Shown: piece by piece, positions 2,219 to 40,900 of the stretch
Position numbering within the stretch: position 1 is the stretch's first letter
How the letters are laid out: every line of letters starts with the position of its first letter
Assembly (NCBI GenBank): GCA_013115145.1
Contig: JAAPAO010000201.1
Location: 1-53,583 of the forward strand
Source of the DNA: Perkinsus chesapeaki ATCC PRA-425
Lineage: Eukaryota; Protista; Perkinsozoa
DNA length: 53,583 nucleotides
Direction of reading: 5' to 3'
The notes under the pieces: model-generated
What the model was told of the DNA's origin: nothing
What the model saw: only the letters and a program-made list of their open reading frames with translations
Database searches by the model: none
Made by a program: the position numbers and the translations under genes

Positions 2219-5200
2219 ATGGAGAGCGCGACCGCGTTGTTTGACACCGCAATAGCTCTGCTATTACCGCTGGCAAGGGCTGTGCCTGAGTGCTCTAACA
2301 CGTCTACCGCGTACCCAGCTGTGACTTGGCACTTTCATTTGGTGACTTCATGCTACCCAGAACAGAGCATATGTTCTATTCCTCGCTGTGCAGCTGGGTA
2401 TAAAGCAACAGATATGAGTTGCCTCCACTACGGAGTGGTAAATATGAATCCAGAATGAACAACCGTTATCGACTTCAATATTCAGATTTCACCAATATGC
2501 GAGTCAGCCACATCGTATTTCACGCTAAGAGTCAGTTCAAACGAGGCAAGCGTAGAGAATATGGTAGTTGCTACGGTAGAAGGTTTTGACGAAAATGGCA
2601 TGCGGTCATTGACTGAGAGTCGGTAAGGCCACGCCCGTGTCTCTTCTATGACGCTTTGAAGCGCTACCAGTTTTAAGTAGCTTAGGGATAACGGGCCAAC
2701 GCAAGGCTTGGAAGCCATTCCGATAGCGCTGTCACCGGCAACTCTGAAACTCAGAAATTTCCAGTCACACCTGATACCCTTCGCCTTTCGCGCAACAATC
2801 TACCTTTTCCTAGTGTGGTTACGCTGGACTCGCCTGAGAAAATACTCTCCTCATTGCTAGGGATCTTATACTGCGTATCGAGTCCCCCGATGGCTCAGTC
2901 CGCGACGAAGTAATTAGTGTGGAAGCTGGGGTGGGCCGCTTCACCCAAGTTCATTCCACAATGGTAGTTGCACCAGAGGGCGAAAGTATATAAGACCTTC
3001 TTTAGGTTGGGCTCATGAAACTTAGTGTGCAGCCACACGTGGCTAGTATCGACGCAAGCATTCTTGCGGGAGCTGTTGCCGAGGTGCTGTGGCGCTCCGG
3101 GCCAGCTCGAACGTTCGATATAATCCGACCGGCGTACCGCGGAACCGTATCTATATCTACGGACAATGAGGTGAGGCTCATTTCCGGAGCAACATTGGAC
3201 GATTATTTTTTCATTATTCCAGCTTGAGATAGAAGTCGAAACTTACGATATTCATGGCAACCCCTCGGAACTTGATGCCAGAACGTGCGAGGTAATGGCG
3301 ATACGAGCAGGCACTGGAGTTCTTCGAAGTGCACGAGCGTGATGCGTTATAGAGTGGCCGATAATTCCCAGGGGCCGACTGCCGCCGCTTTCTAGGGAGT
3401 CCGTGAATGATGGACCTTGGCGCTCAGGTTATAGCAGACCTAGCAACCGTCTCAGAGGCAGCGGTCTCCTGTTCACCCACTGACTGCTTGCGCGCCATAA
3501 TAATAACAGGCGGTTCCGGATCGACCCGAGTCTCTAGCATTGCCGCCCAGACATTAAGTCTACATGTGAACTGTATGAGCGCGTTGAGCACGAGGCCAGG
3601 CGGAAGAGACACGCTAGAAGTTGAAGTCGCCCCCGGTACTGCAAGGTCTTTACAAATGGTAGGAGGCAACTTCGTTGCGACTGCCGGTAAGCCTCCCCGG
3701 GAGCTTGCTGGCTCCACTCGACGTGCCGGGGCAGGTTCACCGGTATCTATACCACTAGAAGCGTTGGACGCCCACGGCAATTTGGCGACTTCATTTGCCG
3801 GTCGCGCAACCCTCAAACTACAGGTAAGTTCGGCAGAAACGCTCAAGCTGACCTTTTGATAAGGAGTCCTCGGCGTGCCGGTTGAGTCGGGTGCAGAGTC
3901 CGCCAGAATCGCAGCCTACTTTCACACTTGGTCGTGCGGTCGCTGAATTCACCAACATGTTCGCCGAATCGTGCAAGGTAATTTTCCCCTACGCAGAAGC
4001 ACCCTCTACCAAGTTGTCACACTTTCCGCAAGTGCAGTTCATAGCATGCCGGTCAGGCCTACCTGCTGGCTGGTGATGGCGTCGATGTCGCAGCAAGAAC
4101 CGTTACACTAACTTGGACGCCCGGAACACCGGTACGCCAGGATATGCAGTGCATAGCTTGTACAGTGCGTTTACTTCCTACGCTTATCACCAGGTATCTT
4201 ACCGGATCAATACTGAGCTGTCCGATGTCGGAATTTCAGTTGACGCTTCCGCTAATATTGTCTTAGAGCTTGTAGACACCTATGGCAACGTTGCCGAGAA
4301 CCAAGTGAACTGTTGCATAACTTGCACCATTGACGTGCCACAGGTCGGGAGCTACCAAGGACGCGTCAGTTTCACTCCCGCAACCGCCGCCATAAGCCCC
4401 GGCAATCTGGTGTACTTCTCTGCTGGCTACTCCACGGTTACAGCCACCCATCGTCTTCCATCACCTGTCACATTGAGCCTCCCTTCGATATCCTTGGGGG
4501 GACTCACTGCCATTCCAGGAACTCACATCGTTGACTTCCAGCCTGGCGCAGCAGTGGAATTGGTGAGAATCCCACCAGAGCACCGAATCCCAAAGAGCAT
4601 TCAGGTCTTCAATACAACGCACGATGTCGTCGTCGGTTCTGATATGAGCCTCGTCGTGTACGCGCGTGACCAGTATAACAATCTGGCCACTCATCTCCCC
4701 ACGGTGACCATTAAGGTGGTGGTCTTCTCGGGTACTTCGAGCTTTCGAAAGTTCTGAGCCTCGAGTGTTCCTAAACTATTCCCTAAACTCCTCAGGCACG
4801 GAAGTTGAATTGGATCCTCCGAGTGGAGCGATGATTATGACCAGTGGGATTGGCTCTATGAAGGCAACTTCGAGGATTGCTCACAGCGCAACATTCCGTA
4901 TGCTCGACGCTCCACAGAGTCTCACATGTAGTTCAATACATCCACGGCCATTTACGGTCACACATGCGCCTGAGCATTCGCTTTGCACGGCCTTAAACAA
5001 CCAGCTCTTGCTCGTTTCCGAGAAACCTTTCGAGGGCCGTCTTGAACATCCTTACACTTGCTCGGCTGAACCATTCGGAAATGAATGAGATGCATTAAAT
5101 AACTTCTCTACGTACCAACATACAATATCTAGTCGGTCAAGGTTGTAAATTACATTCTAGTACCGGTATTTCCCACAAAATTTTTGACAGATACCGATAC

Positions 5201-8200
5201 TGTGACTGCGACTTTCCTTGTCGGTCCGCCGGCGAAGCTCGAGTCTGTCCGTTCGGATGGCGATGGTCCTGTTTCGGTCGACAATACTCTGCGATTAGTC
5301 GTGAAGTTGCAAGACTCGTTCGGCAATGTGGTTACGTCAGCAACAGGGTGGATTTTCACCGCGCGGATAGTGAACGGCATGTCTACAGCATTCACGCTAG
5401 TCAGTGGGCTGGGCGGGGCTATCTTGGAGCACACGAGGGCTGAAACGGTGCAAGTCGAGGTGGAAGATACAAACGGCTATGGTGTAGGTAGCGTACGCAT
5501 GGTGTATCGTCCTGGCATTGAGACAGGCTAGATTTCCCTGTTCTGTCAGGTCGTCATGGACACACCGATCGCAGTCCTTTTCACACACGGCCAGGCAGTG
5601 CAGTTGAGAGTTTCTTTGAACGCTACACGATCCTCAGTGGACATACCAGTTGTTGCGACTGTATCCTGTCTAGATCGTTATGGAAATCTTGCCATAAGTT
5701 ACGATGCGGCGGCCACAGTGGAGTGGGATGTCTCCGGTAGCTCCTCCACGAGCTTTCCTCGTTTGATCTAAAGCTATTATAGGTTCGGGCGTTCCTCGTG
5801 ATCCATATGCAGTCTTCTCCCATGGAAGAGCATCGACCCTCATAACCGCTGATCGGCTAAACGCATCCCCCAGCGAGTCCGTTGTTGTCTCTCTTCGCCT
5901 GTCTGGGCAATCTACGGGGCTGACTGTCCAGAGTACGAACTTATGCCGAAAGCTGATTTTCGCGTTGAGAATTTATGTCTCAGGCAAGCTACTCGAATGG
6001 ACTGTCGGCTCGGCCCGAACGATCTGGCTCACCGGCGGTGCTTCAACCACCGTCGGTTTGGATATGAATATCGAGCTGCAAATCAAGGATCAGTACGGAA
6101 ACTCTCTTCCATCGCTTGATCAGTCGTACACCGTTTGCCTCTCTGTGGCGATTCCCGGTCTTCTTGAAAGAGAACGGTGCATCACCATGTCTTCATCGAT
6201 AGCGTCATTGTCGATCTCATCCTTCCGAGCTGGGCGATTTCTCCTTTCTCTCTCGAGTGTGAGCCCTAACACACTAGTTTTGGCGTCCGAAAAGGAAGTG
6301 ATATTCCTGCCTATCGCAGCTGCACAGTGTGCCGCAAATAGGAATGCTATTGGTGAGGATGCACCTCTCCCCTTCCCATGCGGACAATACTGCAGGTTGT
6401 ATTGCTGTCCTTGAACTATCAGCAAGTAGCAGCAAGGTAGATGATAGCGTCCTGGTGACAATAACTGTGAAGGATCCCCACGAGAACGTCGTAACCGACT
6501 ACTCTGGCCAAATGGTTGTGGAAGTGGCTCGAGGAATCGAAGTTTCTCTATCGACATCCGGCATAGTTCAGGTGACTAACAACATCGCAAACTGAATACG
6601 TTCCTGAGCGAACTGTGGTGCTCAGCTCAATGGAGGCATCGGCAGCTGCTCAGTTTCTACAAAATTACCTCAGTCGGGTGTGAAGGTCCAGCTCTTGGAC
6701 ACCTTTATCACTAATCTGCTCATCGACGGTCTTGGGTATCTTACAGTGAGAAGTGTAGCCCATCATAAGTAATCGTACCTATGTCAGCTCGATTTCCTTC
6801 CCGGAGACGCATTTAAGTATCAGCTCAGCTCTGCCGTTAGCAGCCAGGTTGTCAGCGCGACTGCTACTATTACCGTGTCAGTCAAGGCATTTGATCAATT
6901 CGGGAATAGTCCCCCCGCAACCCTTCCTGCCGGGGAGAACAATGTACAGATTTATACTGTAGGGCCCTCTTGCGGATCAAACGAATAACCAGATTGCTGC
7001 GCGACTATCCTATGTTCAGATTTCTGGAAGTATATTACCGCTAACCGCGACGGTTAAACTCACAGTGCAAGGCTCGGCTGAAGCTGATTTTCTCAGCACA
7101 AAGGCAGGCTCGGTGACTCTTGGTCTGAAGGAGTCCACTTCGAGCCATACTATCGATCTTCGTTCTACCCTCTCTCTTCTTTTCTTGCCTGGTCCGCTAG
7201 CCCAATGGCAAATCAAGGGCCCAAAAATTGAGCTAGTCGGAAGAATAGCCCAAATCGTTATAAGCGCATATGATTCCTTTGGCAACGCTGTGACGGACGT
7301 GCGGGAGCCCGACTATATCTTTGTCGCAATAAAAACAGTGTTGGCATCATCCAGCAACGTAACCGAGACCACAGAGCAGTCCCTCGTGATGGGCGGCCAG
7401 GCCACGACGGAGATAACTGTCCCTGAGCCAGCTGCTGTGGAGCTCACTGCTAGGCACCCCTCCACCTCGACGAAATCTGAGACTTTCGTGATTAATTTCC
7501 GGTTTGACCTAACACCCCCTGAACTCAGTGTTTCACGAGGGAATATAGCCTCAACTTCGGTTGAAGTCCAGTACCTTACGACTGAGGCCGGCTTTGTGCT
7601 CTGTACCGCTCTTGATCGGGATGGATACGAGGCATTCACAACGGCAACTAACGAAGTGAAATGGAGACAGATGCTGGATGGTTCCGGGAAGAAGGTTGGT
7701 ATAGCCGATGGTGTTGAGCTGGTTGGAAGCCTTCGTATCACTGGGCTTACACCGGAGACAACATATGTTGTCCTTTGCTATGCCGGAGATGAGCAGAACC
7801 CTCCGAACCTTTCTACCAAGGAGGATATTATCGCAAACGAGTTCTCCTTCCAGACTCTGCAAAAATTAGAGACTACAGCGGACCTCAGTGAAGGCGAATA
7901 CTTTTGCTCACCAAACTGCGCCACATGGTTGGGCATAAGCATTCCGTTGGTCGCCGTATTGCTCGTGGTGGCCTTTCTTATATTCCGGCAGAAACAGAAG
8001 CTAGCCCTCTCCTTTGAAAAGCGAGAAGTGAGTTCCCGGAACTCAGTTCCACACTAGCTAATCGTCTCGATCGTTCAAAGGTTAAAATGAAATCCCGGCG
8101 ATTCAGCTACTTTATTTTGTCAGCGTGTCCTTAACGTCAGAAATCGCATTCTGCAAGGGCTGCTAGTTGATGACCGAGGAAGTTTCAGGGACGATTCAGA

Positions 8201-33802: not shown

Positions 33803-35420
33803 TTACTCTGAACATTCACAAGGCGTATCAGTGCCGGAGCATACACTTGGTATCTGCCAGTACTTACAGTAGGTACCAGGATGCACCGAGTTGCAGAAGT
33901 CATCACATTGAGGCTCTCCTCCACCGCCACAAGGTGTAGTTGTAGTAGTTGTTGTGGTGTCGCACGACTCAGTAGTGGAAAGAATGACAGTCGTACTGTG
34001 AGGCTTCGTGGTATGTACTGCTGTCGTGCTTACAGACGATGTGGTTGACACCTGCGATGTAGCTATGGCCGTAGTCGTCTCATCACCACATGAGCACGGC
34101 AGATTTGTTCCACTACAAACGCTGGGATACTTGTAGTACATGCAGTAGCTACCACTCTGTACCGAATCGCAGTACGCGTCACACTTCAGCTCGCTACTCG
34201 TGGTCGTACTAGTAGTTGTGGTCGTACTAGTAGTTGTGGTCGTACTAGTAGTTGTGGTCGTACTAGTAGTTGTGGTCGTACTAGTAGTTGTGGTCGTACT
34301 AGTAGTTGTGGTCGTACTAGTAGTTGTGGTCGTAGNNNNNNNNNNNNNNNNNNNNNNNNNNNNNNNNNNNNNNNNNNNNNNNNNNNNNNNNNNNNNNNNN
34401 NNNNNNNNNNNNNNNNNNNNNNNNNNNNNNNNNNCTAGTGGTCGTGGTCGTACTGGTAGTTGTGGTCGCAGCTGAACACCAGCTATCGTCCCATTCGACA
34501 AATCTATTAGCCCGACGAGTATAGTCCCAAACGATGAGATCACAAGAGTATCCTCTCAGAGCACCAGTACCGTCGTTAGTGATTTGGTTCATATCCGATC
34601 CAGCACCGCAGCCACCAACGACCAATTCTGACTTCCCAGCCGGAGAGTTCCACTTCCTTCTGTAAACGGCATCATCACCATCTCTGTAGAAGATGTAACC
34701 ATCCAAAACTTCAATACCAAATTTACCAGTGGGGTTGAATGTGTACTCATAGTTTCTGTGAGTAGAACCAACGTCCCAACTTACCACGATGTTATCTCGA
34801 CCACCAGTTTGAACGATATACAGGGTGTTGCCGAGTTTACGGATACCAGCAGGCTCGTCCAGCTTCTTAGAGCCGTTACCTTGTCCAGAAGCAACCACGT
34901 CGCTGTCCCATGAGGACGCTCTCTTGACAAAGCGATAAACCTTGTTATTCTCGGAATCACTCGCATACAAGACCTGCTCGTCATCATCGTAGTAGAGACC
35001 GGCCCAAGTATAATGACGCGAGCTTTCCTTCACCTTATCGATGCGACCAGCCCCACTCGTACTATATAGATTGATACAGTTATCCACAATAGCAAAGATA
35101 CCAGAGCCATCAGCCTTAACAGCAATAGAATCGGCTTTATCATGTAGTAGAGTAGTCCGAACTGAACCATCAGCAGTGACCTTCCACAACTGATACTCGC
35201 GCTCGTCCAAATCCTTAGCTGATATATACCAGTTGCGAGCCGCATCAAAGTCATAGTCAATCATATCAACACCACCAGCAGGGAGGAACTCGGGTCCCAT
35301 AGTAGCACGATTGTAGACCTCGAGAGCCTCGTTACTGTCACACCACGATGATGGATGGCCGAGTACACTAGTGAAGACACTCGCAAGAATTGAAAACACA
35401 GCGAGGAACGACTGAACCAT
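33803..35420 (-). CDS. Secreted NHL beta-propeller + Thr/Ser mucin stalk + two Cys-rich modules, copy 1 (spans an N gap)
   Basis: Signal peptide MVQSFLAVFSILASVFTSVLG; NHL-like blades (LYASDSENNKVYRF, GQGNGSKKLDEPAGI..LYIVQTGG, VVGGCGAGSDMNQI); (T5S)n stalk; two C-x3-C-x8-C-x8-C-x6-C-x-C modules; stop at 33803. The two track ORFs differ in frame only across the N run. Confidence 0.85.
34200..34468. repeat. 18-nt coding tandem repeat (GTGGTCGTACTAGTAGTT)n encoding the T5S mucin stalk
   Basis: At least 7 perfect units are visible before the gap and degenerate units after it; the true length is unknown. Confidence 0.95.
34336..34434. other. Assembly gap (N run)
   Basis: Run of N inside the 18-nt repeat. 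Confidence 0.99.
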
Positions 35421-35533
35421 AATACACCTTGAAAAATAAAAGCTGAAAACAGAAAGATTTGAAAATCGGACACATACTAACAAACGAATACTAAACACTG
35501 ATGATGACTGAATGAACATAGAAATACTTTGAG

Positions 35534-35589
35534 TCTAGCAGTCTAGGCTAGAGCTAATGATTTTTCAGGCATCCTGTCTCCATTGTGTC
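35534..35589. promoter_or_regulatory. Conserved upstream non-coding block of NHL copy 1
   Basis: TCTAGCA....GGCTAGAGCTAA...TGTCTCC.TTGTGTC is shared with 38288-38343 and begins 114 nt from the ATG (113 nt in copy 2). A regulatory function is inferred. Confidence 0.4.
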
Positions 35590-36537
35590 ATACAGCCACC
35601 GTGATTTCTGACTCGCTCCGAACGATTTCTAGTCTTATTTTTGTGAGAAGTGTTTGGCGAGTCTAAACCTCCTATATATGGCGTTCACAGTGACTAACTT
35701 TGAGGTGTTGCAAGTACGCTAAGCTTTGGGATAAAGCTACTGTTCATCTGCGGAGCTCGCTGTTCGTGCTCTCAAAGCTCGTTTGTTGATGAGAACTTGT
35801 TATCAAAGGAGCCTAGTAGTTCGCATGCTCACCTTGAGCTCTCCGTCAAGAGCGCTCGAAGTTCTTAGGAATGTGGTTAATGCACGTGCTTGCTGTGAAT
35901 ATCAGTGTGAAACAATAGCTTCGAGCTATCAGCGCACCAAATTTTGGACTCAGGCTCAGCACTTACTGCTACTAGTAAACTGGAGAGCTCATGCCATGAG
36001 CAGATTAATAAATTGCCACTAGCTAGCTATATTTCATATCTAATCTACAGAATCTTTACAGTACATCTTTATTATTTTGTAGAGGACAACTATGATCTGG
36101 GGATTCTATTGTACCTCAACGATACGCACCGAGTAGTGTAATAGAATTGAGTGGGCTTCCCTGCGAGACTTCAGTTTTTCGGGCGAAGCAAGTTGAACTC
36201 GAAGGCTCGGAATATAGTTACCGAATAGTTGAAGCAATTTACTCTCAAATTTAATGACTGAACTCAAGCGTGAAGAAACTGCTGAAAAACCTTTGGCAAG
36301 GAAACATCGCTCTTATGACGAACAAGCGAAACATCAAATGAGGTGAAGTACTCTTATCGAACTTCTCAGGAGACGTAGTGAGAAAAACTAGCTTAGAACA
36401 TAGAGCTCAGTTAAAATGTATCGTAGCTTGACAATATTCTCATTCAGTTTGAAACGTTCAGCAAATATGGCTTCCTGTGCAACTTCGATGATAATAAGTT
36501 ATGATTGCATCACACCGTGCCATATCTTGCTCGAGTC

Positions 36538-38175
36538 TTACCTTGAGCATTCACAAGGGGTATTGGTTCCGGAACAGACGCTTGGTACCTGCCAGTACTT
36601 ACAGTATGTGCCAGGATGCACAGAGTTGCAGAAGGCGTCACACTGAAGGTCCCCACCACCACCACAAGGCGTGGTCGTCGTCGTAGTGGTTGTAGTTGTA
36701 CCACATGGTTTAGTCGTAGATAAGGTCCTGGTTGTACTGTGAGTTTTTGTAGTATGAGCCGTCGTCGACGTATGTACCAAGGTAGTGGTTCCAGTACCGC
36801 ACGAACAAGGAAGATTGGTTCCACTGCACACACTAGGATCCTTATAGTACATACAGTAACTCCCGCTATGCATTGAGTCGCAGTATGCGTCACACACCAG
36901 ACCATTGCTGGTTGTACTAGTAGTAGAAGTAGTGGTACTGGTTGTACTAGTAGTAGAAGTAGTGGTACTGGTTGTACTAGTNNNNNNNNNNNNNNNNNNN
37001 NNNNNNNNNNNNNNNNNNNNNNNNNNNNNNNNNNNNNNNNNNNNNNNNNNNNNNNNNNNNNNNNNNNNNNNNNNNNNNNNGGTACTGGTTGTACTAGTAG
37101 TAGAAGTAGTGGTACTGGTTGTACTAGTAGTAGAAGTAGTGGTACTGGTTGTAGACGTTGCAGTGGAAGTAGTGGTACTGGTTATACTAGTAGTAGAAGT
37201 AGTGGTACTGGTTGTAGACGTTGCAGTGGAACACCAGCTATCATCCCATTCAACGAATCTGTTAGCGCCTGTTGTATAATCCCATACGATAAGGTCGCAT
37301 GAGTATCCTCTTAATGCGCCGGTTCCAGCATTAGTGATTTGGTTCATATTCGACCCAGCACCGCAGCCACCAACAACCAATTCTGACTTGCCAGCCGGAG
37401 AGTTCCACTTCCTTCTGTAAACCGCATCAGCACAGTCTCTATAGAAGATGTAACCATCGAGAACTTCAATGCCAAATTTACCAGTAGGGTTGAATGTGTA
37501 CTCATAGTTCCTGATACTAGATCCGATATCCCAGCTAACAACAATATTGTCTCGACCACCAGTCTGAACAATGTACAGGGTATTGCCTAGCTTTCGAATT
37601 CCAGCCGGCTTGTCCAACTTCTTCGAATAGTCGCCTTGTCCAGCAATAATAACATCTCCATCCCACCAGAGGCTCCTTCTCACGAACCGGCAAATCTTGT
37701 CGTTCTTCGAGTCGCTGGCATACAATACTCCCTCAGCGTCGTCGTAGAAGAGACCACTCCAAGTCTTGAAAAAGGAGCCCGACTGAACCACCTCGATCAA
37801 ATTTCCATCGACTGTACTATAAAGCTTGATACAGTTATCCACAATAGCAAAGATACCAGACCCATCAGCCTTAACAGCAATAGAATCGGCTTTATCATGT
37901 AGTAGAGTAGTCCGAACTGAACCATCAGCGGTAACCTTCCACAACTGATACTCACGCTCGTCCAAATCCTTAGCTGATATATACCAGTTGTGAGCCGCAT
38001 CAAAGTCATAGTCAATCATATCAACACCACCAGCAGGGAGGAACTCAGGTCCCATAGTGGCACGATTGTAAACTTCTAGAGCTTCATTATTATCGCACCA
38101 CGATGATGGATGACCGAGTACACTAGTGAAGACAGTTGCGAGAACTGGAAGCAGGGTTAAAAACGACTGGACCAT
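36538..38175 (-). CDS. Secreted NHL beta-propeller + Thr/Ser mucin stalk + two Cys-rich modules, copy 2 (spans an N gap)
   Basis: Paralog of 33803..35420 with the same architecture: signal MVQSFLTLLPVLATVFTSVLG, 10-aa STT repeats, and CDAYCDSMHSGSYC.. and CDAFCNSVHPGTYC.. modules. Confidence 0.9.
   Translation of the reverse strand: MVQSFLTLLPVLATVFTSVLGHPSSWCDNNEALEVYNRATMGPEFLPAGGVDMIDYDFDAAHNWYISAKDLDEREYQLWKVTADGSVRTTLLHDKADSIAVKADGSGIFAIVDNCIKLYSTVDGNLIEVVQSGSFFKTWSGLFYDDAEGVLYASDSKNDKICRFVRRSLWWDGDVIIAGQGDYSKKLDKPAGIRKLGNTLYIVQTGGRDNIVVSWDIGSSIRNYEYTFNPTGKFGIEVLDGYIFYRDCADAVYRRKWNSPAGKSELVVGGCGAGSNMNQITNAGTGALRGYSCDLIVWDYTTGANRFVEWDDSWCSTATSTTSTTTSTTSITSTTTSTATSTTSTTTSTTSTTSTTTSTTSTTSTXXXXXXXXXXXXXXXXXXXXXXXXXXXXXXXXXTSTTSTTTSTTSTTSTTTSTTSTTSNGLVCDAYCDSMHSGSYCMYYKDPSVCSGTNLPCSCGTGTTTLVHTSTTAHTTKTHSTTRTLSTTKPCGTTTTTTTTTTPCGGGGDLQCDAFCNSVHPGTYCKYWQVPSVCSGTNTPCECSR
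36909..37229. repeat. 30-nt coding tandem repeat (TGGTTGTACTAGTAGTAGAAGTAGTGGTAC)n encoding a Ser/Thr stalk
   Basis: Perfect and variant units on both sides of the N gap. Confidence 0.95.
36982..37080. other. Assembly gap (N run)
   Basis: Run of N inside the 30-nt repeat. Confidence 0.99.
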
Positions 38176-38287
38176 TATACACCTTAGAAACTAAAAACCT
38201 GCGAGAACAGTAGAGACACTAGGGACTACACATCGAATAACCGATATTGAGAACTGATGACAACTCATGAACAATGAGTTGCTAGAA

Positions 38288-38343
38288 TCTAGCACTCGAG
38301 GCTAGAGCTAACCATTCCTTGAGCAGCATGTCTCCTTTGTGTC
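38288..38343. promoter_or_regulatory. Conserved upstream non-coding block of NHL copy 2
   Basis: Homologous to 35534-35589 at nearly identical spacing from the start codon. Confidence 0.4.
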
Positions 38344-39236
38344 GCGAAATCGTCGTAACTTCTAGTGTAGTAGGGAACACTCCCAGTCTTCCACTTGAAC
38401 GTGTATTGCTTATCTACGGAAAATAGCTAATCCTGATGGAAGTAATCTGATAGAGGAGCATAGGGATGTCTTGGGATGCAGTTATTCTCAAGTGCAACCG
38501 GAAGGTCGCGCTGGTATACCTCAAGCAGATCTGGCGTCTGCTTTGCACTAAGGATGCTGTTGTCACTCTTGAAGTTCAAGATTTTCAAAGGGGGCTCTGA
38601 AGAATCTTCTCATTCTTGAGGCCCAGCTGGAGAAGATACCATAACTGGGGAGCAAACGCACGTGTCCTGCGGACCGTAACTTAGTTGAAGTAGGAAACCT
38701 GGTTCCCGAGACCATCATATGCCTCTTGTGATAAGAGCCTAATCTTGCGAGTCGTCCAGGCTTCGAGACGCGCTCAATCCGATGCAAAGAGGACGAGGAG
38801 TAAAAGTTCCTTGACGAGGAACAAGTATAAACTCGGGTTGATGACGATGCGCAGAGTGGATCATCACCCGATGAGCACTTTTAACGAAACTACGAACTCT
38901 GAACCTTGATAACATGCCAAGGCTCGACCCAACGGACGAGCACTGATTGGCTCCAATGGAGCACCTCATCGCGACCACTCTTATATCATATGAATGATCA
39001 AGTATCATACCCGTTCACCAAGGTCCAAGCTGCTAGTGACAATGCTGTTAGTGATTGTGCTAGTATTGACCACACGTTCGTCTCGGGTTTCCTATGTATG
39101 AGTTTCACGAACACGAAATGGTTCTCATGTTATTGAAAAAAGATTAAAAATTTAATTAGCGATTGATGGGCAATCGCGTCGTTACCGTAATAATGTGAGT
39201 AACGACCAGATACCTTGGGCTCAGCACATGGTTTGA

Positions 39237-40176
39237 CTAGGGCTGCTTGCTCTTGGTAGTAGTAATAATCGCAGCTGAGCACCATCTATCGTCCCATTCG
39301 ACAAATCTATTAGCCCCAGGAGTAAAGTCCCAAACGATAAGATCACATTTTTCCGAGTATACTCTTAATGCGCCTGTTCCAGCATTAGTGATCTGGTTCA
39401 CATTCGACCCAGCACCGCAGCCACCAACAACCAATTCTGACCTGCCAGCTGGGGAGTACAAACTCTTCTTGTAAACGGCATCATCACCACCTCTGTAGAA
39501 GATGTAACCATTCCAAACATCGATACCAAATTTACCAGTGGGGCTGAATGAGAATTTGAAGTTCCTTTTATTAGAACCAATATCCCAGCTAACCACTGTG
39601 TTATCTCGGCCACCCGTCTGAACGATATACAGGGTACTGCCGAACTTACGGATACCGGCAGGCTGATCCAGTTTACTCGAGCCATTGCCTTGCCCAGAAA
39701 CAACGACGTCACTGTCCCAAGAGATGAACGAGCGTCTAACAAAGCGATAAACCATGTTATTCTCCGAATCAGTTGCATACAGGGCCGTCTCGTAATCATC
39801 GTAGTAAAGACCGCTCCAGGTATGACTCAATATATCGTCCGCGTCGTCGATCCAGTCGTCGATCCATAACAGCTATAGAGTCAGCTTTACCGCTCAGTAG
39901 AGTTAATCGGGAGGAACCATCAGCAACCACCCTCCATAGCTTATACTCGCCCAGAGACAGATCTTTACCAGATATAATCCAGTTACCATACTTATCGAAG
40001 GCATAGTCAATCATATCAATCCCACCATCAGGAAGGAAACCGGCCCACCCAGAAACGCCACCGTAAACTCTCTCAGCCTCGTTGTTATCACACCACGATG
40101 ATGGACGTCCAAGTACACTAGTTGTGGGGACGCTAGCCAGAATTACGAGTAGAACGAGTGACTGCCGGCGGACCAT
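39237..40176 (-). pseudogene. NHL beta-propeller paralog, copy 3: internal deletion with frameshift, no stalk or Cys modules
   Basis: Signal peptide and the first blades (MVRRQSLVLLVILASVPTTSVLGRPSSWCDNNEA...GKADSIAV) are in one frame; the rest (HTWSGLYY...FVEWDDRWCS) is in another. About 24 codons present in copies 1 and 2 are missing at a junction carrying a 12-nt tandem duplication (39843-39866). No GT-AG pair I found restores the frame. Confidence 0.75.
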
Positions 40177-40431
40177 AGCAGTGTTACGATATCGATGTTT
40201 CATTTATTATAATAATATACCTTGGGGGAAGGGAAAACCTGAGGACCGAGAGAAACTCGATTGCGAGCCTACACAAACGAATAATTACTGAGCTCGGACA
40301 ATGAAGTTAGAGCGATGAATTGCTAAGGTCTGGCAGTACAGGGTAGGAACAAAGAGCAGGAGATACTAAAATCGACGGGGTAAGAGTATTCGATCGCGCC
40401 TTCCAAAAATAAATGCATACAGTTAGTCCTC

Positions 40432-40520
40432 TCTAAAAGGGACGTTGCTCTTTGCAACACCCTTTCTAAAAGGGACGTCGCTCTTTGCAACACCCTTTCT
40501 AAAAGGGACGTCGCTCTTTG
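40432..40520. repeat. 33-nt tandem repeat (about 2.7 copies) with an internal hairpin
   Basis: Unit TCTAAAAGGGACGTYGCTCTTTGCAACACCCTT at 40432, 40465 and 40498 (partial), followed by a CTCTTTG micro-duplication. Confidence 0.95.
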
Positions 40521-40900
40521 CTCTTTGCTCTGCCTCGGGTACGATTATTGGTTGCAATGCTGCGCCTTCAACCCGCCTGATCGGTCACAAAAGTCCAGAG
40601 CCGAGCGTTAGAACCGTTGCTCCATCGTAATGGAAGCTAAGCGTAAAATGCATTGTACTATAGGGATTCGTCGAGTTCAGGTTGTATAGGATGATCTACG
40701 CCATATATCGTATTGCTACGTGTGAATCTTTTCCAGCTTACTCAGTGAGTGACTGACTGCGTGCAAACTGACTTACTAACACAACACACACTGTACATCG
40801 ATCTGCACGGGCACTTTTCAAGAAGTGGAGGAACCAGAAGTAAAGGAGATTAGTAATCATAATAGAACAGGTAAGATCAAGCAAGCAACCGACAGCAGAC

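What the first reader, a model, noticed from the sequence alone, without database searches (positions are those of the whole stretch)
33803..40176. Tandem, diversifying family of secreted NHL propeller - mucin stalk - twin Cys-module proteins (best candidate for an undescribed system)
Seen: three co-oriented intronless paralogs. Two encode signal peptide + an approximately 300-aa NHL-like propeller + a repeat-encoded Ser/Thr stalk + two six-Cys modules, with no TM or GPI signal; the third is broken. Established: NHL propellers are ligand-binding or catalytic scaffolds, and 'globular domain - O-glycosylated linker - small Cys module' is the layout of tethered secreted enzymes and adhesins. Inference: a birth-and-death family of secreted host-interaction proteins with a variable head, a variable-length spacer and a conserved anchor.
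Basis: partly seen in the sequence, partly recalled or inferred. Interest (0 to 1): 0.75.

Follow-up and report, generated by a model that had tools for sequence, protein, structure and literature searches.

The report
Perkinsus secreted propeller-stalk-cysteine module gene array
A clam parasite (Perkinsus chesapeaki) carries three neighbouring copies, one of them broken, of an unnamed gene for a secreted protein built from a six-bladed propeller head, a threonine-rich stalk and two small six-cysteine modules. The family is real and found only in this genus so far, but it evolves conservatively, and its cysteine module is a general tag on many of the parasite's secreted enzymes.

Summary
On the minus strand lie copy A (33803-35420), copy B (36538-38175) and a broken copy C (39237-40203). 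A and B encode a signal peptide, a 297-aa head, a Thr/Ser stalk made of perfect 18-nt or 30-nt repeats, and two six-Cys modules. There is no hydrophobic C-terminus.

Both N gaps sit inside the stalk repeats, with the same repeat unit and coding phase on each side. Continuity is therefore plausible, but stalk length is unknown.

The head models confidently (pLDDT 88.7) as a six-bladed propeller closest to NHL domains (Z 23). It fails Pfam NHL, yet its profile retrieves true NHL proteins.

The genome is Perkinsus chesapeaki. The head family gives 22 genomic matches, an estimated 10-16 genes, in old subfamilies shared with P. olseni and P. marinus.

"Diversifying" is not supported. A versus B gives dN/dS of about 0.12 with saturated dS, plus mosaic gene conversion.

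The six-Cys module (motif GSYCKYW..PSVC) matches no Pfam or PDB family. It occurs at least 118 times on 45 contigs, including on S1/P1 nucleases and FAD/BBE oxidases, so it is a CBM-like appended tag. This scan had already noted it on other DNA of this genome (s1-225891).

Binding target, expression and host role are untested.

The parts
33803..35420 (-). Copy A: whole gene, from start codon to stop, read across the N gap at 34336-34434
   Evidence: ORFs. Head is 84% identical to B. The same 18-nt repeat and coding phase lie on both sides of the gap.
34470..35360 (-). Copy A head: 297-aa six-bladed NHL-like propeller. The signal peptide is 35361-35420.
   Evidence: Alignment A1; profile match at E 3.7e-121.
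34190..34469 (-). Copy A stalk: TTTTTS repeats from an 18-nt unit (7.5 perfect copies seen) interrupted by an assembly gap. True length unknown.
34088..34183 (-). Copy A six-Cys module 1
33812..33907 (-). Copy A six-Cys module 2. The stop codon is 33803-33805.
36538..38175 (-). Copy B: whole gene, in frame across the N gap at 36982-37080
37225..38115 (-). Copy B head: the propeller used for the structure model. The signal peptide is 38116-38175.
   Evidence: AF2 pLDDT 88.7, pTM 0.88. NHL domains rank top in the fold search at Z 23.4.
36901..37224 (-). Copy B stalk: T/S repeats from 30-nt and 63-nt units, interrupted by an assembly gap
36799..36894 (-). Copy B six-Cys module 1
36547..36642 (-). 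Copy B six-Cys module 2. The stop codon is 36538-36540.
   Evidence: AF2 of the module gave pLDDT 86.5.
39796..40203 (-). Copy C, first frame: signal peptide, blade 1 and part of blade 2, then a frameshifted tail and a stop
39237..39830 (-). Copy C, second frame: blades 3-6, ending right after the head with no stalk and no Cys modules
   Evidence: No tail match on this contig beyond A and B.
39850..39865 (-). Copy C lesion: junction of a roughly 62-nt deletion relative to A and B, which shifts the frame
   Evidence: DNA alignment A2.
35059..35358 (-). Gene-conversion tract: 94% identical to B at 37814-38113, with dS 0.06-0.17 here against more than 1 elsewhere
34836..35072 (-). Divergent patch, codons 117-195 (end of blade 2, blade 3, loop to blade 4). 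A-B nucleotide identity is 52-68% here, and A is closer to C. The B counterpart is 37591-37827.

Best explanation
This is a tandem array of two intact genes and one decayed gene from a family seen so far only in Perkinsus (22 genomic matches in this assembly, an estimated 10-16 genes). The genes encode secreted modular glycoproteins.

Shown:
- Each protein has a signal peptide.
- The head is a divergent NHL-type six-bladed beta-propeller. An N-terminal strand closes the ring, and two cysteines are invariant.
- A repeat-encoded Thr/Ser stalk follows.
- At the C-terminus are two copies of a 32-35-aa six-Cys module, with consensus C-x3/6-C-x5-GSYC-KYW-x2-PSVC-xGTxxPC-x-C.
- The same module is joined by Thr-rich linkers, at either end, to many other secreted proteins of this genome, including S1/P1 nucleases and FAD/BBE oxidases.

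Inferred:
- The stalk is O-glycosylated and acts as a spacer.
- The six-Cys module is a CBM-like anchoring or binding module, with a conserved Tyr/Tyr/Trp cluster. It would hold its passenger on a glycan surface, most plausibly the parasite's own wall or surface coat.
- The propeller is a ligand-binding head rather than an enzyme, because its invariant residues are the structural NHL-repeat positions.

Evolution: the array changes by tandem duplication, patchwise gene conversion between copies, stalk repeat expansion and contraction, and occasional gene death, all under overall purifying selection.
For: - Anatomy.
- Fold: AF2 pLDDT 88.7 with 24 strands in 6 blades. VIA top hits are TRIM71, Lin41, TRIM2 and PknD NHL domains at Z 22-23. 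Foldseek top hits are the Pizza6 designed six-bladed propellers.
- Homology: the A1 profile hits hundreds of multi-repeat proteins; all six sampled carry Pfam NHL at E 1e-40 to 1e-70. hhalign gives 90.6% probability, E 1.3e-6, over blades 3-4.
- Family spread: 22 own-genome matches. Relatives occur in P. olseni and P. marinus (XP_002776235 has head, stalk and two modules). Subfamilies mix species.
- Selection: dN/dS is 0.12 for heads. Tails have dN 0.13 with saturated dS.
- Mosaic identity among A, B and C.
- Module promiscuity: at least 118 matches on 45 contigs. Passenger domains include PF02265 and PF01565/PF08031.
- Module conservation: G, S, Y, C, K, Y and W are each present in 43-54 of 54 copies.
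- Earlier scan note s1-225891 reports the same module on mucins and a subtilisin.
Against: - No binding or localisation data exist. I found no paper on this family.
- The module has no significant structural or sequence match, so 'CBM-like' rests on architecture alone.
- Most other passengers of the module are enzymes, which by analogy favours an enzymatic propeller.
- ORF continuity across both gaps is unproven.
- The fold-search gradient is flat (NHL Z 23 against YWTD and SGL at Z 20-21), so the subtype of propeller is not sharply defined.
Confidence: 0.6

Rival explanations
1. Tethered enzyme. The propeller would be a catalytic six-bladed domain (lactonase/arylesterase, lyase or cyclase type) delivered to a substrate surface by the six-Cys modules, like the nucleases and oxidases that carry the same tag.
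For:
- SGL, PAL, strictosidine-synthase-type and phytase propellers score Z 19-21 in the fold search.
- Weak DFPase sequence hits, E 0.3.
Against: - No His is invariant across 10 complete heads.
- The invariant Asp, Asn, Gly, Pro, Tyr and Trp sit at the repeated NHL structural positions (FD, D..N, L..P.G, YIxYR).
- The best fold matches are the non-catalytic NHL binding domains.
- There are no Pfam SGL, Arylesterase or Str_synth hits.
Confidence: 0.2
2. Fast-evolving host-interaction effector or adhesin family. The heads would diversify to track host ligands such as mucus or haemocytes, with the stalk length tuned and a constant anchor.
For: - Tandem duplication with one dead copy.
- A strongly divergent patch in blade 3 between A and B (52-68% nucleotide identity).
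- Stalk repeats differ in unit and are perfect, so they expanded recently.
- The family is lineage-specific in a parasite.
Against: - dN/dS is about 0.1-0.2 everywhere that could be measured, with saturated dS.
- Subfamilies predate the split of Perkinsus species.
- Gene conversion homogenises rather than diversifies part of the head.
- The anchor is a general secretome tag.
- Nothing links these proteins to the host.
Confidence: 0.15
3. Assembly artefact. The copies would be haplotypes of one gene wrongly scaffolded in tandem across N gaps.
For: - The assembly holds haplotig-like pairs. C3122 and C156 differ by 0.0066 substitutions per site.
- Both full copies contain scaffold gaps.
Against: - A single N-free stretch (34435-36981) carries head A, a 1.1-kb spacer and tail B.
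- dS between A and B is 0.84 overall and saturated in most windows.
- The stalks use different repeat units.
- Upstream regions are only 43-72% identical.
Confidence: 0.03

Closest known systems
NHL-repeat six-bladed beta-propellers (Pfam PF01436; TRIM71/Lin41, TRIM2, Brat, and the extracellular sensor domain of M. tuberculosis PknD)
   Same: - Six four-stranded blades, with the best structural matches at Z 22-23 and rmsd about 3 Å over about 250 residues.
- Two blades keep the NHL sequence signature (GL..D....LYvsD..N.v.rf and L..P.Gv....g.LYI).
- The family profile retrieves NHL proteins.
- Like PknD and the teneurin NHL domain, it is extracellular.
   Different: - No member passes the Pfam NHL model. 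The best is E 0.042, in one of 16.
- Sequence identity to solved NHL domains is 10-18%.
- There is a family-specific GGCGxGxxxNQ loop and invariant Cys7 and Cys251.
- It is fused to a mucin-like stalk and six-Cys modules, a combination not seen in the hits inspected.
Fungal and oomycete secreted enzymes with a Thr/Ser linker and a small disulfide-rich carbohydrate-binding module (CBM1 type)
   Same: - The layout is a globular domain, a Thr/Ser-rich linker and a 30-40-aa Cys module with conserved aromatic residues.
- The module occurs at either terminus, singly or in arrays, on unrelated secreted enzymes.
   Different: - There is no sequence match to CBM1 or any Pfam family.
- It has six Cys, not four.
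- It is predicted as a helix plus hairpin rather than all-beta.
- Carbohydrate binding is untested.
Cysteine-stabilised alpha/beta (defensin-like) knots
   Same: - The 32-aa variant has CxxxC in a predicted helix and CxC near the C-terminus, with six Cys in total.
- The weak Foldseek rows include plectasin and plant defensins.
   Different: - The Foldseek matches are not significant (E at least 5.6, probability at most 0.06), and VIA found nothing.
- The 35-aa variant has Cx6C.
- It occurs as an appended module on large proteins, not as a free peptide.
Public annotation of this locus (FOL47_003344 and FOL47_003345, 'hypothetical protein'; UniRef names 'Sorl1p' and 'DUF5050 domain-containing')
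   Same: It covers the same DNA.
   Different: - FOL47_003344 is a chimera of B's head (residues 1-265) spliced onto A's head, skipping B's stalk and modules.
- FOL47_003345 bridges C's frameshift with a 58-nt GT..AG 'intron' that deletes conserved coding sequence.
- The true architecture is therefore not in the databases.

Membership tests
NHL repeat / six-bladed beta-propeller clan | Six-bladed propeller fold with NHL domains as nearest solved structures | tested here: met
   AF2 pLDDT 88.7. VIA gives TRIM71 Z 23.4, Lin41 23.3, TRIM2 22.4 and PknD 22.3. Foldseek finds Pizza6 and Thin NHL. The gradient to YWTD and SGL propellers (Z 20-21) is shallow.
NHL repeat / six-bladed beta-propeller clan | Match to Pfam PF01436 above its gathering score | tested here: not met
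   No hit at E up to 1 for A, B or C. Among 16 family members, the best NHL hit is E 0.042, in one member.
NHL repeat / six-bladed beta-propeller clan | Profile-level homology to bona fide NHL proteins | tested here: met
   The A1 profile hits hundreds of multi-repeat proteins at E 1e-18 to 1e-50, mostly through profile positions 121-201. All six sampled carry Pfam NHL at E 1e-40 to 1e-70. hhalign gives 90.6% probability, E 1.3e-6. PDB profile search has NHLRC2 on top but weak, E 0.03.
Catalytic six-bladed propellers (SGL/PON lactonases, PAL) | Conserved metal-binding or catalytic residues lining the central tunnel | tested here: inconclusive
   No invariant His. Invariant polar residues (D39, N238, N258, D279, R286) lie at repeated structural motif positions. 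There are no Pfam SGL or Arylesterase hits.
CBM1-type appended carbohydrate-binding module | Sequence match to the family model (PF00734) | tested here: not met
   No Pfam family for any of 54 modules. The best unrelated hits are E 0.01-0.75, in single members. There are no PDB relatives.
CBM1-type appended carbohydrate-binding module | Small disulfide module joined by a Thr/Ser linker to diverse secreted catalytic domains, at either terminus | tested here: met
   It is found on S1/P1 nucleases, FAD/BBE oxidases, an unassigned domain, mucin-like proteins and the propeller family.
CBM1-type appended carbohydrate-binding module | Binds a polysaccharide | not testable with these tools
   The only support is the conserved aromatic cluster: Y in 52/54, Y in 43/54 and W in 47/54 copies.
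Cysteine-stabilised alpha/beta (defensin-like) fold | CxxxC in a helix paired with CxC in a strand, with fold similarity to defensins | tested here: inconclusive
   The pattern is present in the 32-aa variant only. A helix at residues 3-12 is predicted. Foldseek rows for plectasin and plant defensins have E 5.6-9.3. VIA gives no match at Z 2 or more.
Mucin-like O-glycosylated stalk | Long Thr/Ser-rich tandem repeats between folded domains | tested here: met
   Perfect 18-nt (TTTTTS) and 30-nt repeats. Glycosylation itself is not testable here.
GPI- or TM-anchored surface adhesin | C-terminal hydrophobic segment | tested here: not met
   A and B end two residues after the last Cys of module 2.

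The most novel reading that the evidence does not exclude
The GSYCKYW six-Cys module would be an undescribed domain family that anchors a large part of the Perkinsus secretome (nucleases, oxidases, proteases, mucins, propellers) to a glycan surface such as the parasite wall. The propeller family would then be a set of lectin-like or receptor-like heads displayed on stalks of variable length. Together they would form a parasite surface-display system with no counterpart in apicomplexans.
Probability: 0.3. Interest if true: 0.6.

Novelty: new variant of a known kind. Interest (0 to 1): 0.45.

Why it matters
Perkinsus species kill oysters and clams, and almost nothing is known about their surface and secreted proteins. 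This locus shows that the public gene models hide a whole architecture: propeller, mucin-like stalk and cysteine modules.

The cysteine module marks dozens of secreted proteins. It therefore gives a simple sequence handle for listing the parasite's surface-tethered secretome. It also gives a testable hypothesis for how enzymes are kept at the parasite surface.

The practical value is better annotation, plus candidate antigens or markers. The conceptual novelty is moderate, because the layout copies the well-known scheme of a catalytic domain, a linker and a binding module.

Tried and rejected
- Pfam on all pieces of A, B and C, on 16 heads and on 54 modules: no family found.
- PDB sequence search with the head profile gave only weak hits, E 0.03 or worse. 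With the module profile it gave only chance RNase 4 hits.
- ESM Atlas: the head gave NHL clusters at 0.93-0.94, which is a lead only, with recognition below threshold. The tail gave nothing.
- Word-based protein search: the head found only 3 close Perkinsus proteins. Module searches found 0 and 1 hits. These blanks reflect the tool's length and word limits, not absence of relatives.
- Fold search of the module: no VIA match, and Foldseek matches were not significant.
- Literature: four searches found no description of the family or the module. The 'cysteine-rich modular proteins' mentioned in PMC8062965 carry no sequence detail, and I do not equate them with this module.
- An intron as the explanation for copy C's break is rejected. 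C is shorter than A and B at that point, not longer.
- Haplotype duplication is rejected.
- Positive selection is not supported by pairwise dN/dS. Site models were not possible with 3-4 sequences.
Full report
**1. What is there**

Three related open reading frames lie head to tail on the minus strand.
- Copy A runs 33803-35420.
- Copy B runs 36538-38175.
- Copy C runs 39237-40203 and is split over two frames.

Direct-repeat analysis gives a spacing of 2755 nt from A to B and about 2000 nt from B to C. None of the three needs an intron.

A and B each read as follows:
- An N-terminus of about 20 hydrophobic residues ending ...SVLG.
- A 297-aa head.
- A Thr/Ser stalk.
- A first 32-aa six-Cys module.
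- A Thr-rich linker containing two extra Cys.
- A second six-Cys module.
- A stop codon two residues after the last Cys.

There is therefore no transmembrane or GPI-type tail.

**2. The assembly gaps**

Both N runs (34336-34434 and 36982-37080) lie inside the stalk.

The stalk is encoded by perfect tandem repeats. A uses an 18-nt unit, with 7.5 copies at 100% identity. B uses 30-nt and 63-nt units.

In B, the flanks end and start on codon boundaries of the same 30-nt repeat, so the nominal 99 N keeps the frame.

In A, both flanks carry the same 18-nt unit and both read Thr/Ser in their coding phase. The head side stops two bases into a codon and the tail side starts with the last two bases of a codon. 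A gap length of 2 mod 3 would therefore be in frame, and the arbitrary 99 N produces the apparent shift.

Continuity is thus plausible for both copies but unproven, and stalk length is unknown. The gaps are what one expects from short reads collapsing perfect repeats.

The stretch 34435-36981 has no N (with the gap coordinates). It carries head A, the 1.1-kb spacer and tail B. The tandem arrangement is therefore real and not a scaffolding artefact.

**3. Copy C**

C aligns with A and B up to '...KADSIAV'. It then lacks about 62 nt, which removes two strands of blade 2. It continues in another frame, so the first frame runs into a stop at 39796-39798.

The second frame encodes blades 3-6 and stops 11 residues after the head. 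No stalk or module remnant follows.

C is shorter than its paralogs at the break, so the break is a deletion and not an intron.

dN/dS of C against A is 0.37 for the N-terminal part and 0.21 for the C-terminal part. C was therefore under constraint for most of its history.

I kept its two pieces apart in all analyses.

**4. Organism and public annotation**

The word-based protein search returned the window's own models. These are FOL47_003344 and FOL47_003345 of Perkinsus chesapeaki, plus a P. olseni relative at 71% identity.

FOL47_003344 is a chimera. Residues 1-265 are B's head, spliced directly onto A's head, so B's stalk and modules and both gaps are skipped.

FOL47_003345 restores C's frame with a 58-nt GT..AG 'intron'. 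That intron removes sequence conserved with A and B.

The true architecture is therefore absent from the databases.

**5. The head**

Pfam finds nothing in A, B or C. Across 16 family heads it finds only isolated sub-threshold hits, with NHL at E 0.042 in one member.

An AlphaFold2 model built on the alignment of 16 paralogous heads (A1) is confident, with pLDDT 88.7 and pTM 0.88. It has 24 strands in six blades, plus an N-terminal strand that can close the ring.

An all-against-representatives structural search puts NHL domains on top:

| Target | Z |
|---|---|
| TRIM71 | 23.4 |
| Lin41 | 23.3 |
| TRIM2 | 22.4 |
| PknD sensor | 22.3 |

Other six-bladed propellers (YWTD, SGL lactonases, PAL, teneurin NHL) follow closely at Z 20-21.

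Foldseek's best hits are the Pizza6 designed six-bladed propellers. From my own knowledge, not a tool result, these were designed from an NHL-type template.

The A1 profile was run against 1.84 billion representative proteins.
- About 20 full-length relatives came first.
- Hundreds of long multi-repeat proteins followed, mostly matched through profile positions 121-201.
- All six of these that I scanned carry Pfam NHL at E 1e-40 to 1e-70.

hhalign of A1 against one of them gives 90.6% probability, E 1.3e-6, over blades 3-4.

The ESM Atlas also points to NHL clusters, but this is only a lead.

The head is therefore a divergent NHL-type propeller. It is a member of the fold and clan by structure and profile, but not by the Pfam model.

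Across ten complete heads, the invariant residues are Cys7, Cys251 and the repeated structural positions of NHL blades. No His is invariant. This mildly favours a binding scaffold over an enzyme.

**6. The family**

The head profile matches 22 places in this 41.7-Mb assembly. Allowing for contig-end fragments and haplotig pairs, I estimate 10-16 genes.

Members carry one to three six-Cys modules after stalks of different repeat types. In one subfamily, a different Cys-containing C-terminal domain of about 110 aa takes their place.

Close relatives are 'hypothetical proteins' of P. olseni and P. marinus. XP_002776235, for example, has the head, a stalk and two modules.

A maximum-likelihood tree resolves subfamilies that each mix species. 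A, B, C and a P. olseni protein form one clade (99/99 support), with C branching first. The subfamilies are therefore older than the species.

**7. Selection and exchange**

For A versus B heads, dN is 0.10 and dS is 0.84 overall, giving dN/dS of 0.12.

dS is saturated in codons 120-225 and 270-317. It is only 0.06-0.17 in codons 46-120.

At the DNA level the copies form a mosaic:

| CDS nucleotides | Pattern |
|---|---|
| 169-349 | A and B are 95-100% identical |
| 409-650 | A is closer to C (60-85%) than to B (52-68%) |
| 829-950 | B is closer to C |

This is the pattern of gene conversion between tandem copies.

The most divergent patch covers codons 117-195, meaning the end of blade 2, blade 3 and the loop to blade 4. 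It has dN 0.27 against saturated dS, so it gives no sign of positive selection.

The tails have dN 0.13 with saturated dS.

'Diversifying' is therefore not supported. Both full copies are maintained by purifying selection. That result also excludes haplotype duplicates.

**8. The six-Cys module**

A search of the genome with B's tail gives at least 118 matches on 45 contigs.

The module comes in a 32-aa form (CxxxC start) and a 35-aa form (Cx6C start). Conservation in 54 aligned copies:

| Residue | Copies of 54 |
|---|---|
| G | 54 |
| S | 51 |
| Y | 52 |
| C | 54 |
| K | 46 |
| Y | 43 |
| W | 47 |

It sits at either terminus, singly or in arrays, joined by Thr-rich linkers to several kinds of protein:
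- S1/P1 nucleases (PF02265, E 1e-52 to 1e-56).
- FAD/BBE oxidases (PF01565 and PF08031).
- An unassigned domain.
- Mucin-like proteins.

It has no Pfam match and no PDB sequence relative.

Its AF2 model (pLDDT 86.5) is a short helix followed by hairpins. VIA finds no structural match. Foldseek gives only non-significant rows, which include fungal and plant defensins.

The CxxxC...CxC pattern of the short variant resembles the cysteine-stabilised alpha/beta motif. I treat this as a lead only.

It found a real, unassigned six-Cys module that is a general tag on secreted proteins, including a subtilisin.

**9. Mechanism**

Shown: the domain order, the fold class of the head, the repeat nature of the stalk and the promiscuity of the module.

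Inferred from the established logic of modular secreted enzymes (catalytic domain, O-glycosylated linker, small binding module, as in CBM1 cellulases):
- The module tethers its passenger to a glycan surface.
- The stalk is a glycosylated spacer.
- The propeller is the working head.

The parasite's own wall is the most economical target. The reason is that nutrient-scavenging enzymes such as nucleases carry the same tag.

I rate the explanations as follows:

| Explanation | Confidence |
|---|---|
| Overall reading, of which the binding-head part is the weakest | 0.6 |
| Tethered-enzyme rival | 0.2 |
| Fast-evolving host-effector reading | 0.15 |
| Assembly artefact | 0.03 |

**10. Limits**

- Transcription, localisation, glycosylation and binding are all untested.
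The module's range outside Perkinsus was therefore not established here.
- Four literature searches found no paper on the family.

**11. Verdict**

The family is real, modular, secreted and tandemly duplicated with one dead copy. It is not diversifying, and its 'anchor' is a genome-wide tag already seen by this scan.

It is a new variant of a known kind: a divergent NHL propeller on a linker-plus-module chassis, with an apparently undescribed module. Interest is moderate.

Noticed in passing
window 33803-38175 and 39237-40203 (public models FOL47_003344 and FOL47_003345): The deposited gene models are wrong. One fuses B's head to A's head across B's tail. The other invents a 58-nt intron inside conserved coding sequence to bridge copy C's frameshift.
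   Followed up: yes
L006:1081-1452 (-), L007, L011:2473-2868 (+); protein P0004: One subfamily of the propeller family carries a different Cys-containing C-terminal domain of about 110 aa in place of the six-Cys modules. Its motif is ...QWCIDYF.KLGF.PG...DYAR.AICDP, and P0004 has it twice. It has no Pfam hit.
   Followed up: partly
L059:402-2222 (-), and L060 at 484-2100, 2939-4294 and 5068-6420 (-) (contig C3304): A cluster of genes has N-terminal six-Cys modules, a Thr-rich stalk and an unassigned C-terminal domain of about 330 aa beginning RFGTYSWSQDYWR. The domain has no Pfam hit.
   Followed up: partly
L067 (contig C2990) and L068 (contig C908): Tandem arrays of S1/P1 nuclease genes (two and four copies), each ending in one six-Cys module. 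They could be surface-tethered purine-salvage nucleases.
   Followed up: partly
L012 (contig C3122) versus L013 (contig C156): These are near-identical propeller-stalk-three-module genes on two contigs, 0.0066 substitutions per site apart. They are probably haplotigs of a polyploid or heterozygous genome, so family counts from this assembly are inflated.
   Followed up: partly
window 40428-40521: A 33-nt tandem repeat (2.8 copies, 96% identical) lies in the upstream region of copy C.
   Followed up: no
window 36660-36740 and 33925-34000: The linker between the two modules of A and B holds two extra cysteines flanking a poly-Thr run (C-T8/10-PC-GGGG). They could form a small disulfide loop.
   Followed up: no
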